From positions 1-38,478 of the forward strand of contig NIVC01004671.1 of the NCBI GenBank assembly GCA_002269645.1: a stretch of DNA of 38,478 nt, given 5' to 3'. The position numbers and the translations under genes were made by a program. Of the stretch, positions 6,401 to 37,829 are shown piece by piece; the stretch's first letter is position 1; each line of letters opens with the position of its first letter. This stretch comes from Macrostomum lignano. Taxonomy: Eukaryota. Under the pieces are notes generated by a model, which saw nothing but the letters and a program-made list of their open reading frames with translations, was not told the DNA's origin and did no database searches.

Positions 6401-6465
6401 CTGTCACCTGAATAAGACGAGCGTCAATTAGAAGAGAGGCGGCTTGACTCTCATCTGCATTCCAG

Positions 6466-6653: not shown

Positions 6654-6714
6654 GTGAGCTGGATCAACGCTGCAGCCTGGAATTCCTGGCCTTACCTAGT
6701 AGCAAACCTAATGC

Positions 6715-6910: not shown

Positions 6911-6937
6911 ATACAAATCTTGGATCTTGGCACCTCT

Positions 6938-7138: not shown

Positions 7139-7233
7139 TGAAAGATTTAGTCTCTAATCCCTTAGATTGCGGACCGCCATGAAGTCTTAGGAAAAGTCCT
7201 GCTCAATAAAACTCCTCAATTTGCCGTCCGCAG

Positions 7234-7416
7234 CTGCCCGAGCTCAACCTGGTGAACGTAAAGCCGGGCGAGTCGCGAATCGCGCACTTCTTCCTGCAGA
7301 ATGTTGGCATCATGACGGGCGTCGGGGTGATGTTCACCATCGCCGTATTCGAGGAGGACATCAAGGGGATGCTGGGAGACGAGGAGAAGAAGGTCGTCAT
7401 GGACGGTCCCTGCTGA
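7234..7416 (+). CDS. SLC39A10-like: ZIP transporter terminal exon (TM8 and stop)
   Basis: CCGCAG acceptor (phase 0), LPELNLVNVKPGESRIAHFFLQNVGIMTGVGVMFTIAVFEEDIK...GPC, TGA at 7414-7416. Missed by the ORF track because it has no start codon. Confidence 0.92.
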   Translation: MPELNLVNVKPGESRIAHFFLQNVGIMTGVGVMFTIAVFEEDIKGMLGDEEKKVVMDGPC

Positions 7417-7674
7417 GATGCCGAAATCGGGAATTTTAGCCACTGAATTCTCGCCATTTGCACTTTTATTTAGATCAAATACGGAAAATTATATTTTTTA
7501 GCTAAAAAGTCATCAATTCTACTGATCGGTCGCTTTTAAGTAGCGTGATGCGAAAATTATGTCAGTAAATTGTTTTTTTTTCCTAGAATTTTCAAGTGCT
7601 TCCCTGATAAACCTTTTTGTAAATTAATAATTAAAAAATTGTTGTGGAGTTCTAGTGCGGCCGACCCTCTTTGA

Positions 7675-8765: not shown

Positions 8766-9819
8766 CGCTTCAGTGCTGGAGGGGCATTCAGGATAATGGC
8801 CATCTGTCTCATCAGTCATCACCAAGCTTTAATTATAAATCTCTTTTTATTAAACAATTTTGCTGCCGAATGAAACATTTGAGAACGCAGTGATTGTCTG
8901 TGCCTAACTTCTGGAATATGAATTGCATTACGACTTATTATTTAGCAAATTTATCTGTAATTATCGCACTATTAATCCAAATATTTATGTCACTTTTTTG
9001 TATAATACACTGTGTAGAGTCGTTATTACCAATTTAAACAAAACTTGCACACAAATTTTCTATGCAAATCGGCCACGAGAAATGTGCGAAAGTTCGACAC
9101 CGAGTTTGGATAGAGTTTGCCATCAATGTATTACACCTGTAAGCCACATAATCTATTGTGCTCATAAAATGTTCATCACGAGCCGTTGTGTTAATCCACT
9201 CTTTAATCCCAAATTAGCATTAATACTTGTTGAGCTTCTCCAGTGCTTTGGAAGTTTTTTCATTATTAGGTGTTCGAGTAAAAAACCTGCTGTTTCTACT
9301 ATAAGTAGTTGAAGCTGCACTGAAGGGCAGGCTGCCAATTCTCGCACTGGACACTGCGCAGTGTTTTGCGTCACAACTCACACAATGTTTTTTTTAGCTC
9401 TCGCTACATTTGCTGAAATTCTTCTTTTAAAAAATTGTTTTACCTGCTGGCTACCTCCCAGTTGCTTAATTCGGCACTGGGATTCGAATTCTGCCGCTTC
9501 TCTCTCTCTCTCTCTGTCTGTCTCAGTTATTACCGTTTTGTTCACAGTTCTATGGTTTTATCCTCGTTTTTATTTAAGTATTCCGCAGTTTCTGCTTGGC
9601 ACCTGTTGCTGGTTAACCATAGTTAAGTCATAAACTGACGCCAGACTGCTGACCACGCTGATTGTACGAATAACCTGGCATTGAAATCCAACTAGTTAAT
9701 ATACACAAGTGCTTGCTATGGAATTTTGAGCAACTTGACTTTTCGCTTCATGCTTTTGCTAGGCTGGCTAGGTCTGAGAGTCAGGGAGTTGCACTCTGAG
9801 GCGGTCTGGGGCTACAATC

Positions 9820-12800
9820 TGGGGGCCGGAATCTGGGAGCGGGATCTGGCAGTGGGATCTCGTAATGGGATCTGAGATCTGAAACTAGCATCTGGGATTG
9901 AGAATGGGATCTAGAACTGCAAAAGGGATCTGGGATTGAGAATGGGATCTGGAACTGAGAATGGGATGGGGCCGGACTTGAGAATGGGGTGGGGTAATGA
10001 GAATGGGATCGGGAGCTGAGAATGGGATCTGGGACTGAGAATGGGTTCTGGGACTGAGAATGTGATCTGGGACTCAGAATGGGATCTGGGACTGAGAATG
10101 GGATCCGGGACTCAGAATGGGATCTGTGACTGAGAATGGGATCTGTGACTGAGAATGTGATCTGGGACTCAGAATGGGATCTGGGACTGAGAATGGGATC
10201 CGGGACTCAGAATGGGATCTGTGACTGAGAATGGGATCTGTGACTAATTATAAGGGGATCTGAGACTGAGAATTGGATCTGGGACTGAGAATGGGATCTG
10301 TGACTGAGAATGTGATCTGGGACTCAGAATGGGATCTGGGACTGAGAATGGGATCTGTGACTGAGAATGTGATCTGGGACTCAGAATGGGATCTGTGACT
10401 GAGAATGGGATCTGTGACTAATTATAAGGGGATCTGAGACTGAGAATTGGATCTGGGACTGAGAATGGGATCTGTGACTGAAATGTGATCTGGGACTCAG
10501 AATGGGATCTGGGACTGAGAATGGGATCTGTGACTGAGAATGTGATCTGGGACTCAGAATGGGATCTGTGACTGAGAATGGGATCTGTGACTAATTATAA
10601 GGGGATCTGAGACTGAGAATGGGATCTGGGACTGAGAATGGGATCTGTGACTGAGAATGTGATCTGGGACTCAGAATGGGATCTGTGACTGAGAATGGGA
10701 TCTGTGACTAATTATAAGGGGATCTGAGACTGAGAATGTGATCTGGGACTCAGAATGGAATCTGGGACTGAGAATGGGATCCGGGACTCAGAATGGGATC
10801 TGGGACTGAGAATGGGATCTGTGACTGAGAATGTGATCTGGGACTCAGAATGGGATCTGGACTGAGAATGGGATCCGGGACTCAGAATGGGATCTGTGAC
10901 TGAGAATGGGATCTGTGACTAATTATAAGGGGATCTGAGACTGAGAATTGGATCTGGGACTGAGAATGGGATCTGTGACTGTGAATGTGATCTGGGACTC
11001 AGAATGGGATCTGGACTGAGAATGGGATCTGTGACTGAGAATGTGATCTGGGACTCAGAATGGGATCTGTGACTGAGAATGGGATCTGTGACTAATTATA
11101 AGGGGATCTGAGACTGAGAATGGATCTGGGACTGAGAATGGGATCTGTGACTGAGAATGTGATCTGGGACTCAGAATGGGATCTGTGACTGAGAATGGGA
11201 TCTGTGACTAATTATAAGGGGATCTGAGACTGAGAATGGGATCTGTGACTGAGAATGGGATCTGTGACTAATTATAAAGGGATCTGAGACTGAGAATGGG
11301 ATCTAGGACTCAGAATGGGATCTGGGACTGAGAATGGGATCCGGGACTCAGAATAGGATCTGTGACTGAGAATGGGATCTGTGACTAATTATAATGGGAT
11401 CTGAGACTGAGAATGGGATCTGGGACTGAGAATGGGATCTGGGACTGAGAATGAGATCCGGGACTCAGAATGGGATCTGGGGCTGAGAATGGGATCTGGG
11501 GCTGAGAATGGGATCTGTGAATAATTATAATGGGATCTGAGACTGAGAATGGGATCTGGGACTGAGAATGGGATCTGTGACTAATTATAATGGGATCTGG
11601 GACTGAGAATGGGATCTGTGACTAATTAAAATGGGATCTGGGACTGAGAATGGGATCCGGGACTCAGAATGGGATCTGGGACTGAGAATGGGATCTGTGA
11701 CTGAGAATGTGATCTGGGACTCAGAATGGGATCTGGGACTGAGAATGGGATCCGGGACTCAGAATGGGATCTGTGACTGAGAATGGGATCTGTGACTAAT
11801 TATAAGGGGATCTGAGACTGAGAATTGGATCTGGGACTGAGAATGGGATCTGTGACTGTGAATGTGATCTGGGACTCAGAATGGGATCTGGGACTGAGAA
11901 TGGGATCTGTGACTGAGAATGTGATCTGGGACTCAGAATGGGATCTGTGACTGAGAATGGGATCTGTGACTAATTATAAGGGGATCTGAGACTGAGAATG
12001 GGATCTGGGACTGAGAATGGGATCTGTGACTGAGAATGTGATCTGGGACTCAGAATGGGATCTGTGACTGAGAATGGGATCTGTGACTAATTATAAGGGG
12101 ATCTGAGACTGAGAATGGGATCTGGGACTGAGAATGGGATCTGTGACTAATTATAAAGGGATCTGAGACTGAGAATGGGATCTAGGACTCAGAATGGGAT
12201 CTGGGACTGAGAATGGGATCCGGGACTCAGAATAGGATCTGTGACTGAGAATGGGATCTGTGACTAATTATAATGGGATCTGAGACTGAGAATGGGATCT
12301 GGGACTGAGAATGGGATCTGAGACTGAGAATGGGATCTGGGACTGAGAATGAGATCCGGGACTCAGAATGGGATCTGGGGCTGAGAATGGGATCTGGGGC
12401 TGAGAATGGGATCTGTGAATAATTATAATGGGATCTGAGACTGAGAATGGGATCTGGGACTGAGAATGGGATCTGTGACTAATTATAATGGGATCTGGGA
12501 CTGAGAATGGGATCAGTGACTGAGAATGGAATCTGTGACTAATTATAATGGGATCTGCGACTGAGAATGGGATCTGGGACTGAGAATGGGATCCGGGACT
12601 CAGAATGGGATCTGTGACTGAGAATGGGATCTGTGACTAATTATAATGGGATCTGAGACTGAGAATGGGATCTAAGACTGAGAATGGGATCTGGGACTGA
12701 GAATGGGATCCGGGACTCAGAATGGGATCTGTGACTGAGAATGGGATCTGTGACTAATTATAAGGGGATCTGAGACTGAGAATTGGATCTGGGACTGAGA

Positions 12801-13485
12801 ATGGGATCTGTGACTGAGAATGTGATCTGGGACTCAGAATGGGATCTGGGACTGAGAATGGGATCTGTGACTGAGAATGTGATCTGGGACTCAGAATGGG
12901 ATCTGTGACTGAGAATGGGATCTGTGAATAATTATAATGGGATCTGAGACTGAGAATGGGATCTGGGACTGAGAATGGGATCTGTGACTAATTATAATGG
13001 GATCTGGGACTGAGAATGGGATCAGTGACTGAGAATGGAATCTGTGACTAATTATAATGGGATCTGCGACTGAGAATGGGATCTGGGACTGAGAATGGGA
13101 TCCGGGACTCAGAATGGGATCTGTGACTGAGAATGGGATCTGTGACTAATTATAATGGGATCTGAGACTGAGAATGGGATCTGGGACTGAGAATGGGATC
13201 CAGGACTGAGAATTGGATCTGTGACTGAGAATGGGATCTGTGACTAATTATAATGGGATCTGAGACTGAGAATGGGATCTGAGACTGAGAATGGGATCTG
13301 GGACTGAGAATGGGATCCAGGACTGAGAATTGGATCTGTGACTGAGAATGGGATCTGTGACTAATTATAATGGGATCTGAGACTGAGAATGGGATCTGAG
13401 ACTGAGAATGGGATCTGTGACTAATTATAATGGGATCTGAGACTGAGAATGGGATCTGAAACTGAGAATGGGATCTGGGACTGAG
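9820..13485 (+). repeat. ~3.7-kb 19-20-bp satellite (GAGAATGGGATCTGGGACT with AATTATAATGGGATCT variants)
   Basis: Direct reading; variant units recur in repeated blocks. Confidence 0.97.
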
Positions 13486-13640
13486 AACTAAATTTAATGA
13501 GCTAAAAATCATCGTGTACACGACAAAAACCTGTTGAGCAATTCCGATCGCAGTGCCCGCGGTTTCTAATGAGCCGGTTATAATTATCACCTTTCCAAGT
13601 TCCATAATTACCAAAAGCAAGAGTTGCTAAGAATCTGAAT

Positions 13641-15230: not shown

Positions 15231-15964
15231 GCTTGCGGTTGCCAATGGCAAGTCACTTAAGACAGCTTAGACTTCAGCAAGACTACTAAGTGATTCAAGG
15301 CAAATAACTCGAAAATGTCACAGAAAAGGTTTAGTAGAGATTGAGACAACTACTCGCCTCGGCCAAGAAACTAGTCCTCTGCTTTTGCTTCAGACCAAAG
15401 AAATAAATAAACGGAAATAAGTGTCATTTAATACCTACTTGACTACAAGCCAACGCGTAATAATATCAAACGCACATGTGCCGCAAAGGTTATTCCACCC
15501 TATTCGTGGTTCTTGCCAATAGCTGGTATCATCTTGATGGACTCCCCAAACCTTTCAATGCTGTCGAGCAGCGTCAACGAACGAGCAACGGATAAATTGG
15601 ATCTCACTAGAGTTTACTACAATTTTGACGACGGGTGCATCCACCCTATGAATAAAAAAGCATTCAATATTCACTTGGTGGACGCCACTCGGCTCTTAGC
15701 CCTTCAACACCCGCGACAATTAGTCGAAAAAGCTATTTTTTTAAGAAGCCGATCTCCAATCGAAGACTTGGTCAGGAATAATAACGGAATATAGACGTCC
15801 AATGGCTATACTGCAAATGCTATCGGGGGCCGCGATTGGTTAGGGCTGACTAAAAAAAGCAATTCTAGCTTCTAAATCTTCTAAGTAGCTACGAGCGTGG
15901 TACGGATACATTCTGATTTTAGCGGCACAAAATTTTTGAGTAAGCTTGACTCCAGAACCATCAC

Positions 15965-17068
15965 AATGAATCTCAAACTGCTGACTGCCGCTCTGCTCCT
16001 GCAGGCCCTCGTCATCGCCGACTGCCAGGCCAGTTCGAAGAGAAACGAGTTCCGACTCGACTCAAGCGACAGCAGCTCATCGCCAGTGAGCTTCGCTTCG
16101 CGCAAGTCGGCCAGCCGGATCCACTGCTCCGGACTGTGCTCAGCCAGGTCTGGCTGCTTTGGCATCTGCTGGCTCAGCTTGCTAGAGACTGCCGGCTCTT
16201 CACGGTGTCCGCCTTCTTCAACAGGGACTCCTGGACACTGCTCACGACCGGGCGTTGCGACATCTATGCTCGCGTGGTCCAAGGTAAGTGGAAGGTGCGA
16301 GGTCACACTGAGTTTTATGCTGTTTACCAAGCACAATAAAAAACACCTATAATTTCAAATGCAAGCATTAGAAAGATTCTGTTCACAGACTGCACTCAAA
16401 GCAGGGTTTCATCGGACCGATTTTGCAGCCGGGATATTGATGGAGACAAGCGTCAAGAATATCTTGACGGATCTTGCAGCCACACATTTAACGAGCCATC
16501 TGAGTGGTGGGAGGGCCGGCTGTCACAGCAGTCCATGGTCGCATCCGTCACCATCTACAACAGGCAGGACTGCTGCCCTCAACGTTTGAACGACTTCCAG
16601 CTGCTGGTTGACGGAGTTGTGTGCCACGAGGTGAACATTGAGACTCCATTCTTGGTGAAGAACCTCAGCTGCTGGCAGCTCGGCAATCGAGTTCGAGTTC
16701 TGAATCGGCAGGTCCAGGCGTTTTCCATCTGCGAGATCGAAGCATATGGCTTCTTCTATCCTGGCTGATCCGGAAGCTTCAATGGAACTCTGTTAGATAG
16801 TTGACTAGCTTAATTTTCTAAGCGACATTCATTGAACAGTTTTTTTCAGAATTCAATCGTTCTAATGGTCGATAAATATACCAAAGCATGTCACAAGGAT
16901 CTGAAGATTAAAGTGAAATCCCTGCTGACAAGTAAAAGCAATAATTTCAATGACTTCGATGTTTTTATTGATTCACTGTTGACAAGTTTGCTCCCTCACA
17001 GTGGGGTGCTTTTTCTCAGTGCCAAGTTTTTTGCAGTGAAGGCAAGTGCTTGACAGCACCTTCTGAGC
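15965..17068 (+). repeat. Segmental duplication unit, paralogous to 22839-24241
   Basis: Near-identical exon 1, exon 2 and ~300 bp of 3' flank; the introns differ (75 vs 396 bp). Confidence 0.93.
15966..16768 (+). pseudogene. PAN/Apple + F-type lectin gene, copy 1 (disrupted)
   Basis: Exon 1 15966-16283 is 1 nt short relative to copy 2 (AGCTTGCT vs AGCTCTGCT, ~16180). The exon 2 acceptor reads TTCAA instead of TTCAG (16357-16358). Exon 2 (16359-16768) is still open. Confidence 0.85.
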
Positions 17069-19956: not shown

Positions 19957-20854
19957 TATTGGTTTTTGCATGCTAAGTGAGACATTTTTCAAGCAATCTG
20001 AGACTGAATAGCAAAAACACTATTGTCTATGGCCATCCCTCGCTGCAGCCCAGCTTTTTGGGCGCGCCTTGCAAGTAAAGTGAGAAATTTTTTCAAGCTA
20101 AGTGAGAACCAACCACCGTTCGTCGCACAGGCTGGCCAACTCTTGCTCGACCCTGCGTCCTTCTCGTCCATAGGTTGTAGCCAGTCTCATCGATAAACAC
20201 AGCCAGGTCATTCACAGGCAGTCCCGTCATCATCATAGCATAGTCGCGCCTCGCTTGTATCACATCCTGTGTATTCGCAGCAAGCCTCACGTCGGCATCC
20301 TTGGTGGCGACTTTCAGTGAGATAAGCATGGAGTTCATCGCTCTAGCAATGGTGGATTCAGAGATAGCCGGCTTTTGTGGCAACTCCAAAGTCAGTTTTC
20401 TCTGCACATCCGTCAGAGTAACATAGGGATTTTGCTCAACTATCTGCTCAACGGCGTTCCGCATTTCAGCATCGATTTTTGTTGACCCCGGCTTGCGGCC
20501 ACCGCGTTGCAACGCATGGAATTCACCAGTAGCTGCGTAGCGACTCCATATCCGATAGGCCGTCTTCTTGTTCAGATTAAGGATTTTGGACGCAGTCGAA
20601 ATTGAGTAACCATCTTCGACGGCATTGACCAGGCGCTCTCTATCCTCGTTGCTTGTTAGACGCAGTTGATTTGCCATAGCCCAGCCTTTGTTTTCAATAT
20701 GGTTCTCACTTAGCTTTAAAAAATTTCTCACTTTGCTTGCAAGGCGATCCCAAAAAACTGGGCTGCAGCGAGGGGTGGCCATAGACAATAGTGTTTTTGC
20801 TATTCAGTCTCAGATTGCTTGAAAAATGTCTCACTTAGCATGCAAAAACCAATA
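19957..20854 (-). mobile_element. Internally deleted IS630/Tc1-like DNA transposon with ~155-bp TIRs
   Basis: Inverted arms 19957-20111 and 20700-20854 (about 6 mismatches), TA-containing termini, transposase 5' half inside. Confidence 0.9.
20093..20677 (-). pseudogene. Truncated IS630/Tc1 (DDE_3-type) transposase
   Basis: ATG at 20677; HTH (LNLNKKTAYRIW, GGRK), ISESTIAR, and first catalytic Asp in VFIDETGYNLWTRRTQGR. The ORF then runs into the TIR, so the second D and the E are absent. Confidence 0.88.
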
Positions 20855-22214: not shown

Positions 22215-22839
22215 CAAAAATGCTTTGTGGCAGAGTGGAACAACATAGGGACCAAGCCTATGTAGAAAGAGTATTCAACCGAATAATTAACAATTCAATG
22301 ATTAAGTCGGAATCGGGCCACGCAGCATCACGGATGAAAATTCAGACAGTTTTTTTACTTTTGTCAAAAGAAGTCAAAAGTCAAACCCTTCGCAGCTCCT
22401 ATCCTTAATCATTGCAGGCGCTCTAGGAGCCGCAGGCAGAGTAAGCTGGAAGCGGTGGCATCTGCAGTTAAAGACAGCAGCGATACGAGAGCATACCAGC
22501 TAGAAATCCGAGAAAGAAAAGATTCCAAGAGACAATGGGGTCACAACAAAAGCACGAAAGGGATTCAAAATTATAAAAAAACCAAGACTTTACGTACTAG
22601 CGTGCGGGGAAGGATTTTCAAATGCGGATGAAAAGCTCAGCTCAGCTCATTGTTATATGCTGCTATATGCTCGTCGATTGAGCCATTAAAATAGGCGGCT
22701 ACGATTGGCCACCACAATCGATGTTATTGACTACTTAAGTCTCTTCCGTGCCTGGCGAAGAATGACATCTGCACAGTGGAAAGTTGTTGCTAGCAATTCT
22801 GATTCTTGCGAGACTACCGATAGCTAAAATATTGAAAGA

Positions 22840-23149
22840 ATGAATCTCAAACTGCTGACTGCCGCTCTGCTCCTGCAGGCCCTCGTCATCGCCGACTGCC
22901 AGGCCAGTTCGAAGAGAAACGAGTTCCGACTCGACTCAAGCGACAGCAGCTCATCGCCAGTGAGCTTCGCTTCGCACAAGGCGGCCAGCCGGATCCACTG
23001 CTCCGGACTGTGCTCAGCCAGGTCTGGCTGCTTTGGCATCTGCTGGCTCAGCTCTGCTAGAGACTGCCGGCTCTTCACGGTGTCCGCCTTCTTCAACAGG
23101 GACTCCTGGACACTGCTCACGACCGGGCGTTGCGACATCTATGCTCCAG
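22840..23149 (+). CDS. Secreted PAN/Apple + F-type lectin, copy 2, exon 1 (signal peptide and PAN-like domain)
   Basis: MNLKLLTAALLLQALVIADC signal peptide; HCSGLCSARSGCFGICWLSSARDCRL Cys pattern; G|GTAAGT donor (phase 1). Confidence 0.82.
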
Positions 23150-23545
23150 GTAAGTGGAACTTGTGGCTGGTGTCACTACGCTGGTATGAGTCTTGTGAGC
23201 ACTCTACGAGTGCATATGCTGTTTATGTTGGCTACGAGTTCAACGTCGTGCTGTATGTCAGCGCCTGCCTTCTGGCCTGCTGCGCGAGAGGCGACTCAGG
23301 CTCACTCGTCACGTCATCCGGTCGGAAAGTCGCTGCCGCCAGCCGTTACACGACCAGCTGTTGTGGACGGCAGGTTCCGCAGAGACTTTTGACGGATGCG
23401 CGAACCCCGGTCTGACTCTGACTTGGGAAGCTGACTTTTTGAGATGTGCAGCACAAAGGCGTGCGTTCTAACACCTCCCCCTCTGTGGCGTATGGTGTTG
23501 TTGTTGTTGTTGTTATTAAAGCATATTAAACGCCAACAATTTCAG

Positions 23546-23955: not shown

Positions 23956-25962
23956 TTCGACAGCTTCAATGGAAGTCTGTCAGATAGTTGACTAGCTGAA
24001 TTTTCTAAGCGACATTCATTGAACAGTTTTTTTCAGAATTCAATCGTTCTAATGGTCGATAAATATACCAAAGCATGTCACAAGGATCTGAAGATAAAAG
24101 TGAAATCCCTGCTGACAAGTAAAAGCAATAATTTCAATGACTTCGATGTTTTTATTGATTCACTGTTGACAAGTGGGGTGCTTTTTCTGTCAGTGCCAAG
24201 TTTTTGACATGGAAGGCAAGTGCTTGAAGCACCTTCTGAGCTGTACATAGCACAAAAAGAAGTGTTCTAGTTTTTTGCAGCTAGTTTGATTCAGTTACCA
24301 TGTAAAAATCGCTAAGGTCTTCTCATTCTGAAGCTGCAGACAGAGCAGCACCGTTTTGAGCGACAGGTGCTTGCAGCGCGCTATTGACGGGGCTATCATC
24401 AGAATTGTCATCAGAAACGCTCATGCAGCCTCTCCGGCAACCAGTAGGGGAAGGCTGAATAAGCGCGCATGTGTACGAGAGTATTTATACAATATTTGAC
24501 AATTTTGATGGCACTCACCTCGCAAATAATTCTACGACTTGTGACCCAAACCCAATAGAAAAAATCTTGGATTATCAAGCATTGTGAAACGAGCTGTAAC
24601 TTTATTTTTGGACGAGCAACTACAGTGTAGTAGTAAAATAAAAAACCCAAATGAAGCAAAGTACAACTACCGGTATGAAAGCAGATGCTTTGATTAAACC
24701 AGATTTACATTCATTTAAGTTCAAGAAGCAGCAATGGATTCAACAAAATTGGTTGCAGCTGCAAAGTGATGAGTTGCCACACGAAGGCCAGCGGATGCTC
24801 GGTCGGTACAAATCTTCTGTGTACAGCGGTCAAGACTCCGGTTCGGTCTCTGTCCTTGCCGCACTGGAATCCTCGATACCGATAAGCCGAACAAATAATA
24901 ACGAATTTTAAGCTTGTGAAGTTTTCGCTCAAACAAATCCGACTGATTGTTTTTGCATATTTTATTTGCATCTCCCGCCAGTATCATCTCCCACTAAGTG
25001 ACATCATCTGTATGACCGAACCCATTCATACGGTTTTGTTTGAGCCACAACTTCACAAACTTACAATGATGTAGCATTTGTTATTAACTCTTCTGTTGAT
25101 GGCTTTTTGAGTTTTGATTTATTCAGCCGAACAGACAGATGATATACTTCGAGTATTGGGCTAATGCTGCGATTTTTTGCGTTTCGAAAGCAGTTGGCAG
25201 CAAGTCTTCTCGATTGAAGCTTCCAAGAATCTCTGAAATCAGGTTAATATTTGATATTAAAAGCTTTTTTGCATTTAGATTTCTTTTTCAGTTGGAGTTG
25301 TTCTCACGGAGATTTGCAATTCATGCAAAAAGTCGCTGAAAAATGGATTATCGAGATTTCGGAATATTTATGTTTTTTAGCACTGAATTCCCGATGTCTC
25401 TCATTTTCTGGTCTTCCGAACTACAAGCAGAACAAGTATATTTTATCCGAGGTGCACTCACAACTTTGTCTGTGGTTAGAATGTGGGGCTTTGGACCCCC
25501 GCTAGCAGCCAAAGGAAATATCTATGGAAAAAGCCTACTAACAATCATCGCCCCTCCTTTTTGGGCAGAACTGGGAAAACTCCACGCTGGGAAGAAAAGA
25601 GACAAAAAATAGCTTGTTCCGTTAGTAATTCGGAAGTCGAGAAACCGGGGGTATTGTGAGGCATAGTGCCGAAAACTTCCTATCTCAGTGATGCATCACC
25701 GTCAGCAGGCCTGTCAAAGATTCAATATAGACTACTGAGAAAAGTAGACAAATAAATATTTGAATCGTGAAATCTCTCAAATAGCCCAAAAATGTCTCCA
25801 TATAAAAGAAATGGCAGCATAAAAGAAACGTCAGTGCACACTGCGAGTGGTGGGAGAGGACGGCGTGTGGCTGAGGCTGACTGACGAACGGAAACCGGTC
25901 TGGGTCTGTACGAATTTAGCATCATTTTGCTTTCGTTGCGGATGCCCCAGTTAAAGCTTTAT

Positions 25963-27470
25963 CTATAGCTCGCATAATGCCACTGCAGCAGTTCCCTTAT
26001 GAGGACTCACAGTGCCTACAGTGCTATCCTTGAAAAGCCGGTCCCGCATCGCTCGCTGCAGTTCCGGCTCTCGTCCGATGACGCTTCTGTGTCGGTGAGC
26101 GATGCCGACCAGCCTGTCAACGTCCTGGCCGAATATCAGCGCCAGATAGATCTCCTGAGGGTCGGCAGACGGATCTTCTGCCAGCGCAGTGGTGTCTTCA
26201 ATAATTGGCAGGTTGCACTGGCCCGGCAACAAAATTTTGGCCAGGTAGACAGCCAAAGCGTTGAAGTTCATGTAGAAAGCATTGATGTGGTTTGACAAAT
26301 GAGCTGGAAAGATGTTGGAGTTGAATTCGCGCAGCACCTGTTTATCTGTGTCAATTTTATATTCGTCATCAAGCCGACAACAGAATTTAGCGATGTAGTT
26401 CTTCCTTAGCAGTTGCTGGCTCAGCTCAGTAGCAGTCCGACAGTGTTCGGGGTCCAGTCTTCCTGACGATGACCAGTCTGGTTCGCTGCAACTGGTTAGA
26501 ATATGCAGCAGCTCTTCTCGAGCTTTGTCTCTCTGGCTGCGTCTCAACAATAACAGAACCCTCAAACAGACCTTTGCTGCGATCGCGAAGTCACCAATAG
26601 TTTCTGTCAAGGCCATGGCTTCTGCAAATTCATCGTCAGTTTTTGACGATTCGTCTGTAGAAAGTATTTCCATGCACCTGGTTACAGCTACCGTGGCATT
26701 GTAAATGGCAGCGGAGTGGGCAGGTAAACTCTCCGATGCAGTCCCATCTTCCGGCTTGACGAGGTTCAATCGACAAAAACTCAGTGAAAAGTGGAGAAGC
26801 GGGTTGTAGATAATCTTCTCGTCCCCGACCTGCGGTCTCAACATCAGGGCAAATTCATTTAGAACCTTGTCCAAACTGTTAATTACTTTAGTAGTCGACT
26901 CGGCAATTGAAGCCGCGCAGCTCGATTCCTTCAGGTACAGTGCTGCTTCAGGCAGAAAAAAGTGCTTCATTAGTTTGAGGTCACCCGGTTGGACGGCTTT
27001 TAATGCGCTCTCCAATTCTGTCAGAGATTTTAGTAACAACGGGCGCAGGTTTTCCTTCTGCCAACACTCCGGTGGAGTGGCATCAAGAGCCTGGAATAGC
27101 AGCGTCTTCACGTGATAAGTCTTCAGGCCGAAAGTACTCGTGGAGGTGCAGATCGCATGCTTCACGATGTATTTTAATGTAACAAAGAACCAACACTGCA
27201 CAGTGTTGAGACTCTTCATGACAATGTTTTCAAGAAAAGCGGTGCTGATTCTCTTCTGTCGGCCCCTCCTACCCGGTGCAGCTGCAGAGACCACGTGACA
27301 GGACTGCGGCCGATCGATCTCGATTTTCAAGGCTTGTAGCACATTCTCGGGAAAGTACCGAGCATTGTCCAGCAGAAATATTGTCGGGTAGCAGCAGCAA
27401 ATCTGCGCTGCAACCATGTCCATGGACGGTTTGAGGTGCGACGGACCGTAGTATTTAGTCGGGTTGGATG
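25963..27470 (-). CDS. ANK-cGAS/Mab-21-like protein, exon 3 (third catalytic Asp, Mab-21 C-lobe, helical tail)
   Basis: CTTTTAG acceptor (phase 1); DMVAA, CHVV, RISTAFLENIVMKSL, LKTYHVKTLLF, KHFFLPE are Mab-21 family motifs. A possible further donor (ACT|GTGAGT, ~25995) leaves the C-terminus uncertain. Confidence 0.85.
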
Positions 27471-27553
27471 CTAAAAGACACGACGGGAAAGAAATGGAAG
27501 CCAATGGTACAGAATTACAACAAAGTTCACTGTCACAAGATGAAGGCACTCAC

Positions 27554-27900
27554 TGACTCCTGAAATCGTCACGTGCCCATCCTCGTACGCCATCTTGCTG
27601 CTGTCCGATACTGTTGGGCAACGACAGAACGATGCAATGTGAATCGGCTCCCGAGTCTTGTCCAACAACAGTACGTCGATGTCAGATTCCAAGTCCGTGC
27701 TGCCATCGGCACTCACAATAGAATTGCCGCATCCGTCACTGTAGCTGCCGACGAGGTGAGCTTCGAAGCCGCTCCAGTCGGCGCTGTCGGCAAACTGACA
27801 GCGCAAGATTGCCTGCTGAACTTTCGCCCTGACTTGCAGGCACTGCATTCGCTCCTGGTTGAAACCGGCTCGTTCCAAAGCCTCGACCAATACAGACACA
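27554..27900 (-). CDS. ANK-cGAS/Mab-21-like protein, exon 2 (NTase G-S loop and DxD)
   Basis: TAGCAG tandem acceptor (27903/27900); VGSYSDG...LESDIDVLL; A|GTGAGT donor, 83-bp intron in phase with exon 3. Confidence 0.85.
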
Positions 27901-27992
27901 CTGCTAGGATTGAAAGCAAACAAAAGCATACAAATAAGTAACAATTTCAAACAGGTTCCGTCTTGGTCGTCTGCAGTTTGATTAGTGGTAAT

Positions 27993-28183
27993 GCACTCAA
28001 TTCTAACTGTCAGGATGGTACCAATGTCATCCAGCACTCTATTCTGACTGTCAGGACGGTACCAATGTCATCCAGCACTCCATTCTTACTGTCAGGATGG
28101 CACCAACGTCATCGAGCACTCCATTCTAACTGTCAGGATGGTACCAATGTCATCCAGCACTCCATTCTGACTGTCAGGATGGC
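27993..28183 (+). repeat. Intronic 41-bp tandem repeat (CTGTCAGGATGGTACCAATGTCATCCAGCACTCCATTCTGA)
   Basis: Units start at 28007, 28048, 28089, 28130 and 28171. Confidence 0.92.
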
Positions 28184-28283
28184 TGCAACACACTCCTTCG
28201 ACGCCAACGGTTGGTTAGCTAGTTCCGATAGGAATATAACACAAAATATTTGTTAAACTGAAAGATAAAGAGACAAAAATTAC

Positions 28284-29176
28284 TTGAATCCATCGGAACA
28301 CATTTCAGCCTCGGTAATTAGAGTCAGCATCTGCTCATTGTCTAGTAGCCTAACCAGTCCTTGGACCGAATCAGTTTGCGGCAAGCTCAGCAGAGCACTG
28401 ACCGCCTCCTCCTTGCTGCACTGCATCAAGAGCTCCTTGCAGCATTCGACGTGGCCAAACGTCAACTTTGACGAGCGCTCAAGATACGGTAGCAGGCATT
28501 TTAGGCTTTCCAAATGTCCGCTTCGCGCAGCCAGCTCGATCGGCGTCAGGTTTTCAGCGTTAGAAGCGTCAGGATTCGCTCCATGGCGGAGCAGAAGTCC
28601 AACAATCGCTGCGTGACCTCGCATGACAGCAGTGTGCAGCGGCGTCATCTTCGAAGCGTCGGGATGTCCGATTAAACTTGGCGAACCGAGCGCCTCCAAG
28701 AGCAGCCTGGCTGCCTCTAGGTGTCCATCTCGACAAGCCAGGTGCAGCGGCATTCTTCCAAAGTCGTCTTGCCTGTCAGCCTCAGCTCTCGCCTTCAGCA
28801 GTCGCTGGATGACGTCAGAGTAGCCATACAGGGTGGCCACATGCAGCGGCGTGGACCTTTCGCAGTCCGGTGAGTTTACATCGTCACCAGCTTGGATCAA
28901 GCGCTGTACAACTAAGCCGTGACCATTATAGGCGGCTATGTGCAGTGGCCTCCAGAGATCACTCTTGCACTTTGTTATGCTGGCGCCTCGTTCAAGTAGC
29001 AGTCCGACCACAGTTTCGTGACCCCTCTCAGCTGCCAGAATCAGAGGCGTGGAGTTGTCCAACTCGTCCTGCTCATTCACGTCTGCTCCGGAATCGAGAA
29101 GCTGCTCTACCTTATCAAGTCTGCCTTCTGAAGCAGCAGCGTTTAGAGGCGTCCGGAAGCAGTTTCTGTTTTCCAT
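28284..29176 (-). CDS. Ankyrin-repeat exon (7 repeats plus a partial one), predicted exon 1 of the ANK-cGAS/Mab-21-like gene
   Basis: TPLNAAA, TPLILAA, RPLHIAA, TPLHVAT, MPLHLAC, TPLHTAV, TPIELAA. The apparent stop overlaps an AA|GTAATT donor (phase 2). First ATG is at 29176; an upstream exon is possible. Confidence 0.88.
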
Positions 29177-32807: not shown

Positions 32808-35776
32808 TTACACGAGGTGGCCCAACCGTGGTTTAACACAATTTTTTCGGCGCTGAACTGCGCTTCTAAACCCACTATTTAAATATCCGCGGATGGTACG
32901 GGGATCGGATGCAAGTGGACATGCCGCAATCTTTAAATACTTAGACGCGATTTCGTTGACTGAACGTTCGATTAGAGAGCTGATGGGCGGGAGGCACCAA
33001 TCGATCTTCGTTCGCAACTGCAAGGCTTTATTTTTTTGCCTTCCCATAATGCGTTGGCTACGCATTACGCCGTAGAAACTTTCAGCAATTGCCTCCCCAC
33101 CACCTGTGTTCAGTGCAACGTCAAGAAGAATGCACACAGCTCGACCAGCTTCTTCAAAGACTGGTTGAACTGTGTATAATTGTTTTATAAGTGCTGCCTC
33201 ATCCAGAATACAGTTGTCATAACAGCGTACATCAGTTTCAACTTTAAAAACCTGCTGGAGGCGCGAATTCTCTTCAATTTTTATGGAATTAATGATTTGG
33301 CCCTTAATTGGCTTTTTTGACTTGGAACATACAAGGCACTGTATCCCATACGGAGCAAGGTGACCCCAAAAGAGGGATTCAATAACATTCTTGTACTTTA
33401 CATGTACGTAGCTATGGTTTCCAAGTATCAGTTCTGAAAATAATTCGTCTGATTCAGCCACCTCAGAAATATATGGGAGTGAAACCACATAATTAAAAAA
33501 CGAACAAAACTCTGGCTCACCAGCCTCCATGAAGCCAGAAAAGTTTATGCACTGCCGAATAGGCTTGGCTGTACCATTGGAAGCAGTTTCACGGGAACCA
33601 CATAAAAGGTATAGTAGCTGCTCAAAGTCCATAAACTTGGCTAAGATATTTGAGCATGCTGAGGTTCCCTTATTTAATCGATTAGCCACACTTTGACGGA
33701 GAGAGCTGGAAACGACTTCGACCTCTCTGACTGCATCATTAGTTGTTCTCTCCTCCCAAAGGTATACTTTCTTCTTATTACACCTCCGACGTCTTCCTCG
33801 ACTACTTTCTGCTTCTTGCCCGACATATTCTTCGCCAATTACATGCCAGCCCTCTAGAAGCCGCACCTTCTTAAAGCTCATACCTTCAATGTCAGCTCGG
33901 TGCTTGTCATATAATGGACGACACTTTCTATCCATCATTTGTAGAAGGCGATTCCCCATGAAACAATTTTCCAGTGATTGAATTGCAATCCCTGGGCCAG
34001 CTCCATCATTTCAACTAGTGGTTGAAACACATCTAGTAGCAGACACAGATCGGTAGCAAAGTCTGCTCCCAAAACCCTATATTGGAGGGGAAAGTCTTCA
34101 TCTTCATCGTGAATGCGACGAAAAGTTGCTGCATACAGACTGTAAGCTCTTTCAATTTTGACCCACTGCTTAACAGATGAGCTTGTAAATCGCTGTGTTG
34201 CATATGGTATTGGTACAGACACTTTTTCCTTCATTTTGGACGCCACTTTTGACATTAAAGTATGGTTTTTGCCCCTTCCCATTAAATGGTTAAACTCGTT
34301 GGCCCTTTCAATAAACAATGTTAAGCAATCTGCCGCAGGTTTACCGTACTTTGACTCGCGAACATCTAACACCGCTAAATTAAGTAAGTGCGATACATCC
34401 CATATTACAGGTTGAAATGTAGAACTGTCCGCGATATTGCTACGCCCTGACAAGCGGGTTATTTCATTTGCAAACATTGCCGGTTGATACTGGCCATCAG
34501 CTGCTGTACCACAATACCGCAAGAGGTCCTTTTCCCCCAGTTTTAATTCATCTTGAATCGTGCGAAAGATAAGCTGCGCTAGCTCAGCCAGACTCCCCCA
34601 GTAACTACTACGCGATCTAAGTCCTGACTCGTGCTTGTGTCAGAATCTGATTCATTCGATTCACCAGAATCAGAAACATCACTATTTACTGAAGCACTGG
34701 AGTTCTCCTCGCAGACGTCTTCATTTTGTACAAAATAAACACATGGGGCACCAACTGGGAATGCGACTCTTTCCCCTCGGCTTATAGTTGCAAGCAAGAT
34801 AGCCTGGTTTGTCTCGCGGGTCTGTGTCGCTTTATCAACAATTCCCATGAAATGTGGAGGGAGACCTGTAGACTCCAATGGCGTCAAAAGAAGCTTCCGG
34901 TTTTCATCATTGATCCATTCGTTAGCTGCATTAATAATAATTGAAAGCTGTTTTCTTCCGTGCCCCCGATTTCCAATTTGACAGCCATTGAGTTCTAGAA
35001 AAGTTACTTGATTTTCATAGTGTACAGCACCAGCCTTGGATCTAATAGTTTGGATTGCTGAGCGGACTAAGCGTTTAGCAATTTCGTGAGATAGTTTGTC
35101 TTCTTCTGCTTGATCCTTTTGTTTTTTACAGAGAGCGCATGCTGCCGTCCCTGTGAATTATTTGATGACCCTAAAAGATGCCCTCGCAGTTTGCTCTTGA
35201 AATTTCGCCAAAACTGTGTATCTTTTTTATTAGAAGTCCCTTTTATAATCAACTCAGTTTCGCTGGGATTCATGTAAACACCTGTGCCCAATGTGCAATT
35301 ATCACTATAGTGACGAGACACTTGAAAAACAGACATTTTACTCAGCTTTCGAGTATCTAAAGCTTCCCAGCATGTTTTACACCTTACTACAGAGTGTCCA
35401 TCTTCTTCATTCAAAAATAATTCTATGTCTGGGACTTCCCGCGCTACGTCTACAATAGAGTTTAGCGTCATCCACTTCTCCAAGTCCAATACAAACTCGC
35501 TGTTAGTTACACTTGCGCTGTGACTTCGATTGGAATTCTCAGATGGCTTACCTAATGTCTCAAAGGCAAAGGCGAGTTTTCTTTCAACTATATCTCCTAT
35601 CATACTAGGCAGTTTTTTAACAAGATCGGAAAATGCATTGGCACAGTCACCAGCACAGGATGGGTTTATTACACCAGAGTTTGTTGGTGGTAGAGTAGTA
35701 CTTTCTTCGCGATCAGCCTCAGAACGAGTCTTCTTTGCCTGAGGTGCCTCAGTATCGCTAGAAGCTAAAAATTCAT
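32808..35776 (-). pseudogene. hAT-type transposase, roughly 990 codons, with 3-4 single-base frameshifts as sequenced
   Basis: Four frames join: RCKTC Zn motif; STGLPPHF..IVDKAT; GTAADGQY; WDVSHLL; YATQRF; C-terminal dimerisation-like GEAIAESFYGVM. The 5' end is uncertain. Confidence 0.8.
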
Positions 35777-37829
35777 TTTTTCTTTTATATTAATGTGTTG
35801 CTCATTCTAAAAGCATATTGTAAAATGTGTAAAAAGCCATAAGAAACACTTTAAATTACATGAAATGGTCTCTCTTTCATCTGGTGCAGCAACAGGGTGA
35901 GATCTCTTTGAAGTCCTATGTGTTTTAGCAGCTTCATGTTCTGAAAGTGAAATAGTTATGAAGTAGTAAATAGAAATGATCAAAAAAACAGATGAAGTTA
36001 TACTTCTAAAAAAACTTAAGCCATACCTCTAACAAGCAAGATGGCCTCCTGGGAAGAATTCCTAACCAAATTGCAAGTTTTGGCAGTGTGGAATTTACTC
36101 GCAGTGTGCCGATCCTTGTCTCTCTTTTGAGAGACAGTGTACTTCAACTAAAATATTTCAACTATAATAATCAAACTATTGAAAACAATATATATAAATA
36201 ATATTTAGAAATAGTGAACCAAATTTACCTTTCCTTGTAGATAACATTCCTTACATATAAAAATGTTAGGACCTCTATCCTGAAAGGCAAGGCCTAGTGG
36301 CTGTGACTGGCCTGAAGACATACTAGAACCAGCACCTTTATCTTGGCGCCATAATTCTAAAAAAAGAAATTTGAATAGCAGTTACTTTAATTGAAAAGTT
36401 TGAAATATACCATCCTATTTAAACTATATATTCAATGTTAAATAATCTTAACTAACCAAAGGAAAAAAGCTTGTCCATCCTCTCGATTTACAGAAGGGGT
36501 AGTAGTAATAGTGATAGGTGAATCTGGCCTAGGAATGGATCCAGCACCACTGCTATTGTCAATTGGACTAGCAGTAAAAACAGAAACAGTTGCTCTTTGC
36601 AAAAGCAAAGGAGTGCCAGTAGGACTAGGTTCTGGTGGGGCCTGGATTTCATTTTCAATATCAATTGTGTCTTTGGCAGTTATCATAAGATATGAAATAA
36701 TGGCAATTGTCCAAATCCCTGGCACAACAGCAAGGAAAGCCATTATGATATGATGTTGTCTTATTGAATGTTGCAGATGCTAAGATGCAGATCAGTTAAA
36801 AAATAATCATGAAATAAAAGATTTTATTTCTTATTATTAGTATTAATAAATATTACTATTTTAGTATTATTGAAACAAACAGTGGAACTATATATAAGTT
36901 ATTTATAAACACTATAGCTTTTAGTTTTAAAATAGTATTGCAGACTTGCAGTGTAGTATTGAAAAAAATTACAAAAATAAAAAGTATAAATCAAATGATA
37001 AATTCCAAATCATAATGTATAAACCTTTGACCTGCCTCATGGCTTATGCTTGACACTGAAAGCTTTTTAATAGCCAATATCTTAATCTTAATTCTTAATG
37101 GCCCTATGTGTAGTAGGGCTGTAGGCTAGTTTAGTTATGAAATCCTATACAAAAACAAAATGTCTAAGTCCAATTAGTCCAAATTATAAGTGTAAATTGT
37201 TCGATTCTTTTTATTTTAGGCACTGCAGTTGCCCTTCAATAAAACTCGAAAACTAAACTCGCTATATTGATTGTTTGCCAATTGCCATCACCGATGGCTG
37301 GCAATGCCATTCGCATAGTCACTTCAAATCTAAAGAAATTGTACGCGTAAAATATTAGTATTTCTTAGAAAAAAAGTTAAGCAAATGGTTTAACGTGAAA
37401 TTTCAAAACAGTTAATTGTGCAAAGATTAAAAAAATGAGAAAGTAAATTCATCTTTTCGCATTTGTTAAAGACTGTAGTGACTTTTTCTTAAAATCTCTG
37501 AGAAAATGTAGGAAAGAGTTCAGACAACACGGCCAATTAATAAAGCTGGGAATTTACGGTATATTGAACGAACATAGAATCAAATCCGTATTTAAAATAT
37601 TAAAAACTTGTTCTTACGAATGGTGCATCAAACGTTTCAATTTCCTCAAAAGCAAAAACATAACATTGGGGCGAAAATGGGTCGGATTTTGACGGATCAT
37701 ATACGTACAATTATAAATTAATATGCATTACATGTATATTTGTATGTGGTATTACATGTACTGTACTTACATGAATGATGTTTTTTCTCACTCGTCGAAG
37801 GGACATCTCTGCAATTTTTTTTAAAAATG

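What the first reader, a model, noticed from the sequence alone, without database searches (positions are those of the whole stretch)
25963..29176. Ankyrin-repeat / cGAS-like nucleotidyltransferase fusion gene (candidate ANK-cGLR immune sensor)
Seen: three separate ORFs join through canonical GT-AG introns with matching phases (29176-28284, 27900-27554, 27470-25963) into ~915 aa with no stop or frameshift. The product has 7 ankyrin repeats, an NTase with G-S-x20-D-I-D and a third Asp (DMV), a Mab-21 C-lobe and a helical tail of roughly 300 aa. Known: this catalytic signature defines cGAS/Mab-21 enzymes, and animal cGLRs make cyclic dinucleotides that activate STING. Inference: the ankyrin array may replace nucleic-acid sensing with protein-ligand sensing or autoinhibition. 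I know of no functional characterisation of this architecture but cannot search for one.
Basis: partly seen in the sequence, partly recalled or inferred. Interest (0 to 1): 0.85.

Follow-up and report, generated by a model that had tools for sequence, protein, structure and literature searches.

The report
Flatworm ankyrin–cGAS-like enzyme fusion gene
This is a real, transcribed gene of the flatworm Macrostomum lignano that joins seven ankyrin repeats to a cGAS-like nucleotidyltransferase; it is one of 50 or more similar fusion lineages in a genome where I could not find STING, and its type is catalogued but its function is untested.

Summary
On the minus strand, 29176-28284, 27900-27554 and 27470-… join through GT-AG introns in matching phases. 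They encode seven ankyrin repeats, a flexible linker, a cGAS-fold nucleotidyltransferase (G349-S350, D371-x-D373, D431), a Mab-21 C-lobe and a helical tail.

One correction: database proteins from transcript-based annotation splice out a third intron (26010-25233) and end in a fourth exon (25232-25161). The product is 923 aa, not 915.

The window is Macrostomum lignano. The gene matches GenBank BOX15_Mlig016808 and UniRef A0A1I8GL45. Two paralogues carry ankyrin repeats and the enzyme domain in a single uninterrupted ORF, so the fusion does not depend on the splice call.

An AlphaFold model (pLDDT 87) hits cGAS and Cv-cGLR1 first. The catalytic residues are kept in 44-46 of 50 paralogues. At least 56 clusters at 50% identity share the ANK→NTase order.

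Li et al. 2023 already list ANK-cGLR fusions, including M. lignano entries. The five M. lignano enzymes in their screen carry no active-enzyme name in Table S3.

STING and SAVED were not detected in the assembly, which is a weak negative.

Verdict: a new member of a known but uncharacterised kind, and a probable protein-ligand-gated cGLR with an unknown receptor.

The parts
28284..29176 (-). Exon 1. ATG at 29176, preceded by an in-frame TAA at 29224-29222. Encodes seven ankyrin repeats (residues 1-235, 29176-28472) and a helical, partly flexible linker (residues 236-297).
   Evidence: P0117 (PAA70212.1) starts at the same MENRNCF.
27901..28283 (-). Intron 1, 383 nt, GT...AG. It holds a 41-nt tandem repeat x4.6 at 27993-28182. 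The acceptor is a tandem tag|cag (27906-27901).
   Evidence: The junction is used in P0118, P0119, P0001 and P0117. Repeat copy number differs between homeologues.
27554..27900 (-). Exon 2. Encodes the N-terminal spine helix and the first part of the nucleotidyltransferase core: G349-S350 (27749-27744) and D371-I-D373 (27683-27675).
27471..27553 (-). Intron 2, 83 nt, GTGAGT...TTTTAG.
   Evidence: Spliced in all database proteins.
26011..27470 (-). Exon 3. Encodes the rest of the nucleotidyltransferase core with the third Asp D431 (27420-27418), the Mab-21 C-lobe (PF20266, 27177-26935) and most of the helical tail (from 26790).
25233..26010 (-). Intron 3, 778 nt, donor ACT|GTGAGT and acceptor gatttcag|.
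   Evidence: P0118, P0119 and P0001 skip it.
25161..25232 (-). Exon 4. Encodes the last 23 residues, RFLEASIEKTCCQLLSKRKKSQH, and the stop TAG at 25163-25161.
   Evidence: It is identical to the C-terminus of P0118.
25118..25123 (-). AATAAA polyadenylation-signal motif, 38 nt after the stop.
   Evidence: Read directly from the sequence. Its use is inferred.

Best explanation
The gene encodes a cytosolic 923-aa ankyrin-repeat cGAS-like receptor (ANK-cGLR) of Macrostomum lignano. It is one deep-branching member of a large flatworm-specific family.

Proposed mechanism:
- The seven-repeat ankyrin array is the input module. It binds a protein or other non-nucleic-acid ligand, holds the enzyme in check, or both.
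- Ligand binding frees or orders the cGAS-fold nucleotidyltransferase.
- The enzyme's G-S loop and three aspartates (D371, D373, D431) then make a nucleotide second messenger from NTPs.
- The family-specific helical C-terminal domain, packed after the C-lobe, probably serves regulation or oligomerisation.
- The signal goes to a receptor that is not a recognisable STING.

Shown here: the gene structure, the fusion, the fold, the conserved catalytic residues and the family expansion.

Inferred: catalytic activity, the product, the role of the ankyrin array, an immune role and the receptor.
For: Gene and fusion:
- The splice model checks out.
- Database proteins identical or 99% identical span the junctions: A0A1I8GL45, A0A1I8HI38, PAA47279.1 and PAA70212.1.
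- The GenBank annotation is built from RNA-seq and transcriptome assemblies (PMC5730564).
- Paralogues on C4379 and C854 have ANK, NTase and tail in one uninterrupted ORF of 1036 and 967 codons.

Fold:
- The AlphaFold2 model of the 99%-identical homeologue has pLDDT 87.3 and pTM 0.82.
- The best PDB matches are human, pig and mouse cGAS and Cv-cGLR1, with E 3e-6 to 1e-5 and TM 0.5-0.61 over about 390 columns.

Active site:
- GS sits at the end of strand 1, DxD on strand 2, and the third D on a later strand of the model.
- A global profile alignment pairs them with cGAS G212/S213, E225/D227 and D319. The cGAS sequence used was verified against 5v8o_A.
- The five positions are kept in 44-46 of 50 paralogues, against a mean column identity of 13%.

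Selection: 19 synonymous and 18 non-synonymous codon differences separate the homeologues. By a rough 3:1 site ratio this gives dN/dS of about 0.3.

Ankyrin array as input:
- ANK lies N-terminal of the NTase in 56 of 115 representative clusters, and in 39 of 55 members spread across the family tree.
- Array length varies from about 200 to more than 800 residues.
- Four of the 11 replacements in the ANK/linker exon between homeologues (E106K, R107S, A174K, K176N) sit just before TPLH motifs, the usual binding face (the structural placement is from general knowledge of ankyrin repeats).

Not a nucleic-acid sensor:
- Core pI is 6.8 and whole-protein pI 5.8. Li et al. report higher pI for dsDNA/dsRNA-responsive cGLRs.
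- There is no Zn-thumb insert.
- The five M. lignano cGLRs in Li et al.'s screen carry no active-enzyme name in Table S3.

Cell-death or immune flavour: paralogues are fused to caspase, RING or WSC domains.
Against: - No enzymatic, expression or infection data exist for this gene or any ANK-cGLR.
- The Pfam N-lobe model PF03281 does not match it. In the whole genome that model finds only three MAB21L-type loci.
- The sequence-only PDB search is insignificant (E 0.8).
- The local profile alignment to cGAS covers only the C-lobe. The global alignment that pairs the triad has low probability (39.6%).
- I could not superpose coordinates.
- A Trp that is nearly invariant in the family, five residues after the G-S loop (46 of 50), is Cys here.
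- No STING or SAVED receptor was found.
- The five relatives without an active-enzyme name in Li et al.'s screen could equally mean that the clade is catalytically dead.
- Two of the four genomic copies carry 1-bp deletions. These may be assembly errors or decay.
Confidence: 0.55

Rival explanations
1. Pseudoenzyme or scaffold. The Mab-21 fold is kept as a nucleotide-binding or purely structural module, as in MiD49/MiD51 or MAB21L1. The protein works through ankyrin- and tail-mediated protein interactions and makes no messenger.
For: - No active-enzyme name is given for the five M. lignano relatives in Li et al.'s Table S3.
- No STING or SAVED receptor was detectable.
- The N-lobe is too divergent for PF03281.
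- A family-conserved Trp next to the G-S loop is Cys in this gene.
- The protein has large protein-interaction modules on both sides of the fold.
Against: - G-S, D-x-D and the third D are kept in 88-92% of 50 paralogues that otherwise share only 13% mean column identity. That pattern is hard to explain without catalysis.
- This gene keeps all five positions.
- Absence from the screen's list of active enzymes is expected for enzymes that need an unknown ligand.
Confidence: 0.2
2. An active nucleotidyltransferase with OAS-like or other chemistry, such as linear 2'-5' oligonucleotides, or nucleotidylation of a protein held by the ankyrin array, rather than a cyclic dinucleotide signal.
For: - No STING is detectable in the genome.
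- The fold is shared by cGAS, OAS and other Pol-beta-type transferases (general knowledge).
- The G-S to D-x-D loop is nine residues longer than in cGAS.
Against: - The best structural matches are cGAS and cGLR entries, and no OAS entry appears in the 50 listed.
- No OAS1_C hit appears in Pfam.
- Nothing in the data speaks to the product.
Confidence: 0.15
3. Two separate genes. An ankyrin protein ends at TAA 28282-28280, and an independently initiated or trans-spliced NTase protein starts at Met317 (MQCLQ...). The fusion would then be an artefact of a polycistronic precursor transcript.
For: - About 7% of M. lignano transcriptional units are polycistronic precursors (PMC5730564).
- One UniRef model (P0002, 552 aa) starts at MQCLQ.
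Against: - The junction is in phase with consensus GT-AG signals.
- Four database proteins from two annotation sets span it.
- Met317 would cut off the conserved spine helix (family consensus S..LH..L..AGF...RA), which begins exactly at exon 2.
- Paralogues have ANK and NTase in one exon.
- The ANK-then-NTase order recurs in 56 clusters.
Confidence: 0.03
4. The ankyrin array is a nucleotide-messenger receptor, as in RNase L whose ankyrin repeats bind 2-5A. The protein would then sense the product of other family members and amplify the signal.
For: Only an analogy with RNase L (general knowledge), the very large number of paralogous enzymes and the lack of another receptor.
Against: No sequence or structural evidence supports it. 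The ankyrin part matches generic designed ankyrin proteins best.
Confidence: 0.05

Closest known systems
Animal cGAS-like receptors (cGLRs) with appended ankyrin repeats, catalogued by Li et al. 2023 (Cell 186:3261; preprint 10.1101/2023.02.22.529553): Stylophora pistillata ANK-cGLRs and M. lignano entries such as PAA67649.1 and PAA58690.1 in Table S2
   Same: The architecture class is the same: ANK plus a cGAS-like nucleotidyltransferase with an intact active-site motif. It comes from the same flatworm clade as the five M. lignano cGLRs they cloned, at 28-33% identity and E 1e-33 to 1e-60.
   Different: - None of these fusions has been characterised.
- This gene is a long-branch singleton lineage, at most 41-43% identical to any paralogue cluster.
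- No coral ANK-cGLR appears among the 114 hits at E <= 1e-3, so the coral and flatworm fusions are probably independent. That last step is inference.
Human cGAS (for example PDB 6CT9, 6LRK) and Crassostrea virginica Cv-cGLR1 (8GJW)
   Same: They share the bilobal fold and are the top Foldseek hits. G-S, acidic-x-acidic and the third acidic residue sit at equivalent positions. The C-lobe motifs R.S.s.E and (S/T)YH.KT are shared, as aligned.
   Different: - Identity is only 12-15%.
- There is no Zn-thumb.
- The G-S to D-x-D loop is nine residues longer.
- The core is near-neutral rather than basic.
- It has seven extra N-terminal ankyrin repeats and a C-terminal helical domain of about 283 aa with no PDB match.
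MAB21L1/MAB21L2 developmental proteins
   Same: Both match the Mab-21 C-terminal domain (PF20266).
   Different: The genome's true MAB21L-type loci (C401, C402, C835) score 102 bits on PF20266 and 128 bits on PF03281. This gene scores 32-36 bits on PF20266 and nothing on PF03281. It is not an orthologue.
OAS / RNase L system
   Same: It is a conceptual neighbour: a cGAS-related transferase paired with an ankyrin-repeat module in one pathway.
   Different: In that system the ankyrin repeats are on the receptor (RNase L), not on the synthase. There is no OAS1_C or RNase L domain here.

Membership tests
cGLR (cGAS-like receptor, as in Li et al. 2023) | cGAS-like bilobal nucleotidyltransferase fold | tested here: met
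   The AlphaFold2 model has pLDDT 87.3. The top Foldseek PDB hits are cGAS and Cv-cGLR1, at E 3e-6 to 1e-5 and TM (target) 0.5-0.61. The model is of the 99%-identical homeologue P0001, because spliced sequences could not be submitted.
cGLR (cGAS-like receptor, as in Li et al. 2023) | Intact active site: [G/S]S ... [D/E]x[D/E] ... [D/E] | tested here: met
   G349-S350, D371-I-D373 and D431 are present. They sit on the expected strands of the model. A global profile alignment pairs them with cGAS G212/S213, E225/D227 and D319, though at low probability (39.6%). They are kept in 44-46 of 50 paralogues. No 3D superposition was possible.
cGLR (cGAS-like receptor, as in Li et al. 2023) | Pfam Mab-21 C-terminal domain (PF20266) above the gathering score | tested here: met
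   32.0 bits against a cut-off of 24.1, E 1.4e-7, residues 512-592. The genome scan gives 36.3 bits.
cGLR (cGAS-like receptor, as in Li et al. 2023) | Pfam Mab-21 nucleotidyltransferase domain (PF03281) | tested here: not met
   No hit at E <= 1. In the whole genome PF03281 finds only three MAB21L-type loci. The N-lobe of the whole flatworm clade is too divergent for this model. This is a model-sensitivity failure. The fold itself is supported by the structure-based test above.
cGLR (cGAS-like receptor, as in Li et al. 2023) | Ligand-activated synthesis of a nucleotide second messenger | not testable with these tools
   This needs biochemistry. The five related M. lignano enzymes carry no active-enzyme name in Li et al.'s Table S3.
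cGLR-STING pathway | A STING receptor in the same genome | tested here: inconclusive
   PF15009 finds nothing. Human STING LBD, validated as PF15009 at 1e-74, finds nothing at E <= 1. The tool warns that an empty answer proves nothing. PF03281 did find three low-copy loci in the same genome, which serves as a partial positive control. Planarians and parasitic flatworms are reported to lack STING.
Vertebrate-type cGAS (DNA sensor) | Zn-ribbon thumb and basic DNA-binding surfaces | tested here: not met
   The cGAS Zn-thumb segment aligns to a gap. Core pI is 6.8 and whole-protein pI 5.8.
Ankyrin-repeat proteins | Tandem 33-residue ANK repeats | tested here: met
   Ank, Ank_2, Ank_3, Ank_4 and Ank_5 match at E 1e-30 to 1e-44. 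There are seven repeats by eye, residues 7-240. Designed ankyrin proteins are the structural hits for this part.
MAB21L1/2 orthologue | Strong match to both Mab-21 Pfam models in a protein of about 360-410 aa | tested here: not met
   The orthologue-type loci lie elsewhere, on C401, C402 and C835.

The most novel reading that the evidence does not exclude
Macrostomum lignano, alone among the flatworms examined so far, has built a large innate-immune receptor family (50 or more lineages) in which ankyrin arrays of variable length take the place of nucleic-acid-binding surfaces as the sensor of cGAS-like enzymes. These enzymes would signal without STING, through a new receptor or directly through appended effectors such as the caspase domains seen in some paralogues. 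The window's gene would be a minimal, soluble member suited to working out that pathway in a transgenic-tractable animal.
Probability: 0.25. Interest if true: 0.8.

Novelty: new member of a known kind. Interest (0 to 1): 0.5.

Why it matters
Most animal cGLRs have no known ligand, and none fused to a protein-interaction module has been characterised. Here the ankyrin fusion is the commonest form of the family: 56 of 115 clusters, spread across the whole tree. The catalytic residues are conserved, the phylum is otherwise reported to lack cGLRs, and STING is not detectable.

If the enzyme is active, two open questions become testable:
- What non-nucleic-acid cues can switch on a cGAS-like enzyme?
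- What reads its product when STING is missing?

M. lignano has transgenesis and RNAi, so the tests are practical.

For this window alone the result is modest. It is one already-annotated 'hypothetical protein' from a large family.

Tried and rejected
I used the database proteins P0002 (search) and P0001 (fold) instead, and the contiguous exon-3 translation for the tail.
- The sequence-only PDB search gave only cGLR1 8gjy at E 0.8.
- Pfam PF03281 gave no hit.
- Local hhalign against human cGAS aligned only the C-lobe. I needed a global alignment to place the triad.
- The tail has no Pfam family and no Foldseek hit better than E 0.12. The weak TPR-like matches (Ctr9, Rap/NprR, Fis1) are not enough to name a fold.
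- STING and SAVED were not found in the assembly.
- Literature searches found no ANK-cGLR function, no Macrostomum cGAS work and no mention of Mlig016808.
- M. lignano is absent from Li et al.'s Table S5, which gives cGLR and STING counts per species.
- I considered and rejected a two-gene or operon reading (see the rival explanations) and a MAB21L orthologue.
- A homeologue comparison for positive selection on the ankyrin exon gave 11 non-synonymous against 10 synonymous codon changes. That is too few to conclude anything.
I could not examine the ANK-NTase contacts or make a true superposition of the triad.
Full report
**What is in the sequence**

On the minus strand, three long ORFs lie in series: 29221-28280, 28067-27471 and 27549-25963. 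Joining 29176-28284, 27900-27554 and 27470-25963 gives 2748 nt with no stop. The donors are GT (AA|GTAATT and CA|GTGAGT), the acceptors are pyrimidine-rich AG sites, the introns are 383 and 83 nt, and the phases match. The ATG at 29176 follows an in-frame TAA at 29224-29222.

**Organism and existing annotation**

A word-indexed protein search with the NTase-plus-tail part returned only Macrostomum lignano proteins. The assembly, 764 Mb in 5269 contigs, matches the published Mlig_3_7 assembly.

Cluster look-up gave four relevant proteins:
- **UniRef A0A1I8GL45 (P0118, 747 aa).** It is identical to the window's allele across the exon 1/2 and 2/3 junctions.
- **A0A1I8HI38 (P0119, 929 aa), PAA47279.1 (P0001, 793 aa) and PAA70212.1 (P0117, starts MENRNCF).** These come from a 98-99% identical second copy.

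The GenBank models derive from a genome-guided RNA-seq transcriptome (StringTie/TACO/TransDecoder; PMC5730564). They therefore count as transcript evidence that the ankyrin and enzyme exons are spliced together. Two models differ by one Ser at the junction, which is explained by a tandem acceptor tag|cag at 27906-27901.

**Correction of the 3' end**

All of these proteins leave exon 3 at ACT|GTGAGT (26011|26010). They continue with RFLE(A/V)SIEKTCCQLLSK(R/C)KKSQH. I found this sequence at 25232-25161, behind a gatttcag acceptor, followed by TAG and by AATAAA at 25123-25118. The gene thus has four exons and encodes 923 aa.

**Copies in the genome**

There are four copies:
- The window (C4671) and C763 are 99.95% identical.
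- C4507 and C1258 form a second pair, 98-99% identical to the window.
- The second pair has a 30-nt insertion at 28462, which adds GAVLRLASAF and completes an eighth, degenerate repeat.
- The second pair also differs from the window by one 41-nt repeat unit in intron 1.
- Each copy of the second pair carries one private 1-bp deletion, at window 29051 (C4507) and 27351 (C1258).

This fits the known redundancy of the DV1 assembly.

Between the two pairs there are 19 synonymous and 18 non-synonymous codon differences, roughly dN/dS 0.3. There is only one substitution between 28283 and about 26600, introns included. That looks like gene conversion, not constraint.

**The fusion does not depend on the splice call**

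Paralogues on C4379 and C854 carry, in one uninterrupted ORF of 1036 and 967 codons:
- a hydrophobic helix that looks like a membrane anchor;
- ankyrin repeats;
- the nucleotidyltransferase (GSFADGWGSSLQRLNGSVASSSDVD ... RPSMDF);
- the C-lobe and the tail.

**Domains**

- **Ankyrin repeats.** Pfam finds them at E about 1e-44.
- **Mab-21 C-lobe.** Pfam finds Mab-21_C above threshold.
- **N-lobe.** The N-lobe model PF03281 does not hit. In the whole genome it finds only three MAB21L-type loci. The expanded family therefore has a divergent N-lobe and is not MAB21L.
- **Fold.** An AlphaFold2 model of P0001 with 50 family sequences is confident (pLDDT 87.3, pTM 0.82). Foldseek against the PDB puts human, pig and mouse cGAS and Cv-cGLR1 first, at E 3e-6 to 1e-5 and TM 0.5-0.61 over about 390 columns. 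Designed ankyrin proteins follow for the N-terminal part.
- **Tail.** Modelled alone (pLDDT 82, pTM 0.82), it is mostly helical. It has no significant PDB match and only weak TPR-like similarity, and no Pfam family.

**Active site**

- G349-S350, twenty residues, D371-I-D373 and D431 are present.
- In the model, GS ends strand 1, DID lies on strand 2, and D431 lies on a later strand.
- The family profile aligns locally to the human cGAS C-lobe (probability 77.5%, E 1.9e-5).
- The global alignment pairs the residues with G212/S213, E225/D227 and D319, and shows the Zn-thumb as a gap. The cGAS sequence used is identical to PDB 5v8o_A.
- Across 50 paralogues with 13% mean column identity, these positions are kept in 44-46.
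- One nearby Trp, conserved in 46 of 50 family members, is Cys in this gene.

**The family**

An exhaustive HMMER search of 1.84 billion representatives found 114 clusters at E <= 1e-3 and 75 at E <= 1e-10.
- The 21 clusters I looked up among hits at E < 1e-8 were all M. lignano, as were two weaker ankyrin-bearing hits (P0089, P0107).
- The named non-Macrostomum hits, Lingula and Dreissena, appear only at E about 1e-4 over the C-lobe.
- 56 of 115 clusters have ankyrin repeats N-terminal of the enzyme.
- On a tree of 55 enzyme domains the ANK-bearing members (39) are spread over all major branches. The window's gene sits on a long branch without a supported sister. The fusion is therefore old within the lineage.
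- Some paralogues add a caspase domain (PAA59752.1, PAA93319.1), WSC plus RING, or a P-loop kinase-like domain. A caveat is that some transcript models may be read-throughs.
- The genome holds at least 144 Mab-21_C matches, many of them clustered on the same contigs.

**What is known**

Li et al. 2023 report the following:
- 87% of cGLRs are stand-alone enzymes, some carry TPR or ankyrin modules, and three S. pistillata cGLRs carry ankyrin or death domains.
- Their Table S2 lists M. lignano proteins with Ank_2.
- 'Most platyhelminthes' have no cGLR other than Mab21-like proteins.
- They cloned five M. lignano cGLRs, #89-93. In Table S3 the column that names active enzymes is blank for all five.

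My gene's enzyme-plus-tail region is 28-33% identical to those five. I found no paper that characterises an ANK-cGLR.

**Downstream partner**

- The STING ligand-binding-domain model finds nothing in the assembly.
- Human STING LBD finds nothing at E <= 1. I checked that this query is PF15009 at E 1e-74.
- SAVED is not found either.
- The tool warns that empty answers are not proof. The same kind of search did find the three MAB21L loci.
- Planarians are reported to lack cGAS and STING. Parasitic flatworms score 0/0 in Li et al.'s Table S5.

**Mechanism and confidence**

The best reading (about 0.55) has four parts:
- The protein is a soluble ANK-cGLR.
- The ankyrin array is the ligand-binding or autoinhibitory input.
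- The cGAS-fold enzyme is the output, making a nucleotide signal.
- The receptor is unknown and probably not STING.

The gene structure, fold, motif conservation and family pattern are shown. Activity, product, ligand, receptor and an immune role are inferred.

The rivals are a pseudoenzyme or scaffold (0.2), a different transferase chemistry (0.15), an RNase L-like nucleotide-binding ankyrin array (0.05) and two separate genes (0.03).

**Verdict**

The thing is a new member of a known but uncharacterised kind. Interest is moderate (0.5). The single gene is ordinary within its family. The family itself, ANK-gated cGAS-like enzymes in an apparently STING-less flatworm, is a worthwhile lead.

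Noticed in passing
window 27993-28182 (intron 1): A 41-nt tandem repeat x4.6 lies inside intron 1. The second homeologue pair (C4507, C1258) differs from the window by exactly one 41-nt unit.
   Followed up: partly
window about 28283-26600, compared with C4507 and C1258: Only one substitution separates the homeologue pairs across intron 1, exon 2, intron 2 and the first 870 nt of exon 3. The flanking ankyrin exon differs by 2.6% and intron 3 by 1.5%. This looks like a gene-conversion tract rather than selection.
   Followed up: partly
G000:C4507 (L035) and G000:C1258 (L034), at window-equivalent 29051 and 27351: Each of these copies has a private 1-bp deletion in the coding sequence. That explains the truncated GenBank models PAA47279.1 (starts at MPLHLACRDGH) and PAA70212.1 (471 aa). 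It could be assembly error or early decay.
   Followed up: partly
window 28462: The window allele lacks 30 nt that encode GAVLRLASAF in the other homeologue. This removes most of an eighth, degenerate ankyrin repeat.
   Followed up: yes
M. lignano proteins P0063 (PAA59752.1), P0072 (PAA93319.1), P0056 and P0061: Paralogues of this enzyme are annotated as fusions with other domains: a caspase domain (Peptidase_C14, E 1e-25 to 1e-27), WSC plus RING, or an AAA_33/Zeta-toxin-like P-loop domain. Some may be read-through transcript models.
   Followed up: partly
L036 (G000:C4379:25401-35400) and L038 (G000:C854:216401-226400): These single-exon paralogues (1036 and 967 codons) have a hydrophobic, transmembrane-like helix (LLALALAAVALATVLIGLAV) ahead of the ankyrin repeats. 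Some family members may therefore be membrane-anchored.
   Followed up: no
window residue 354 (codon about 27734-27732): A Trp conserved in 46 of 50 family members, five residues after the G-S loop (consensus GSFxEGWGNS), is Cys in this gene and its homeologues (GSYSDGCGNS).
   Followed up: no
window 3823-4578 (+): This exon-like ORF has a His-Gly repeat and a ZIP zinc-transporter match (PF02535, E 1e-21). It is embedded in very long microsatellite and minisatellite arrays that fill most of 1-13500.
   Followed up: partly
window 20093-20803 (-): This ORF has the helix-turn-helix domains of a Tc1/IS630-type transposase (HTH_32, HTH_28, HTH_Tnp_IS630). It is probably a transposon remnant.
   Followed up: partly
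window 15885-16352 (+) and 22828-23415 (+): Two ORFs share an almost identical start that looks like a signal peptide plus a Ser-rich stretch (NLKLLTAALLLQALVIADCQASSKRNEFRLDSSDSSSSPVSFAS...). This is a local duplication flanking the transposase remnant. Pfam found no match for the second copy; the first was not scanned.
   Followed up: no
window 32808-35789 (-): Four overlapping long ORFs (192-400 codons) lie on one strand and have no Pfam match. They may be one frameshifted large gene or a mobile-element ORF.
   Followed up: no
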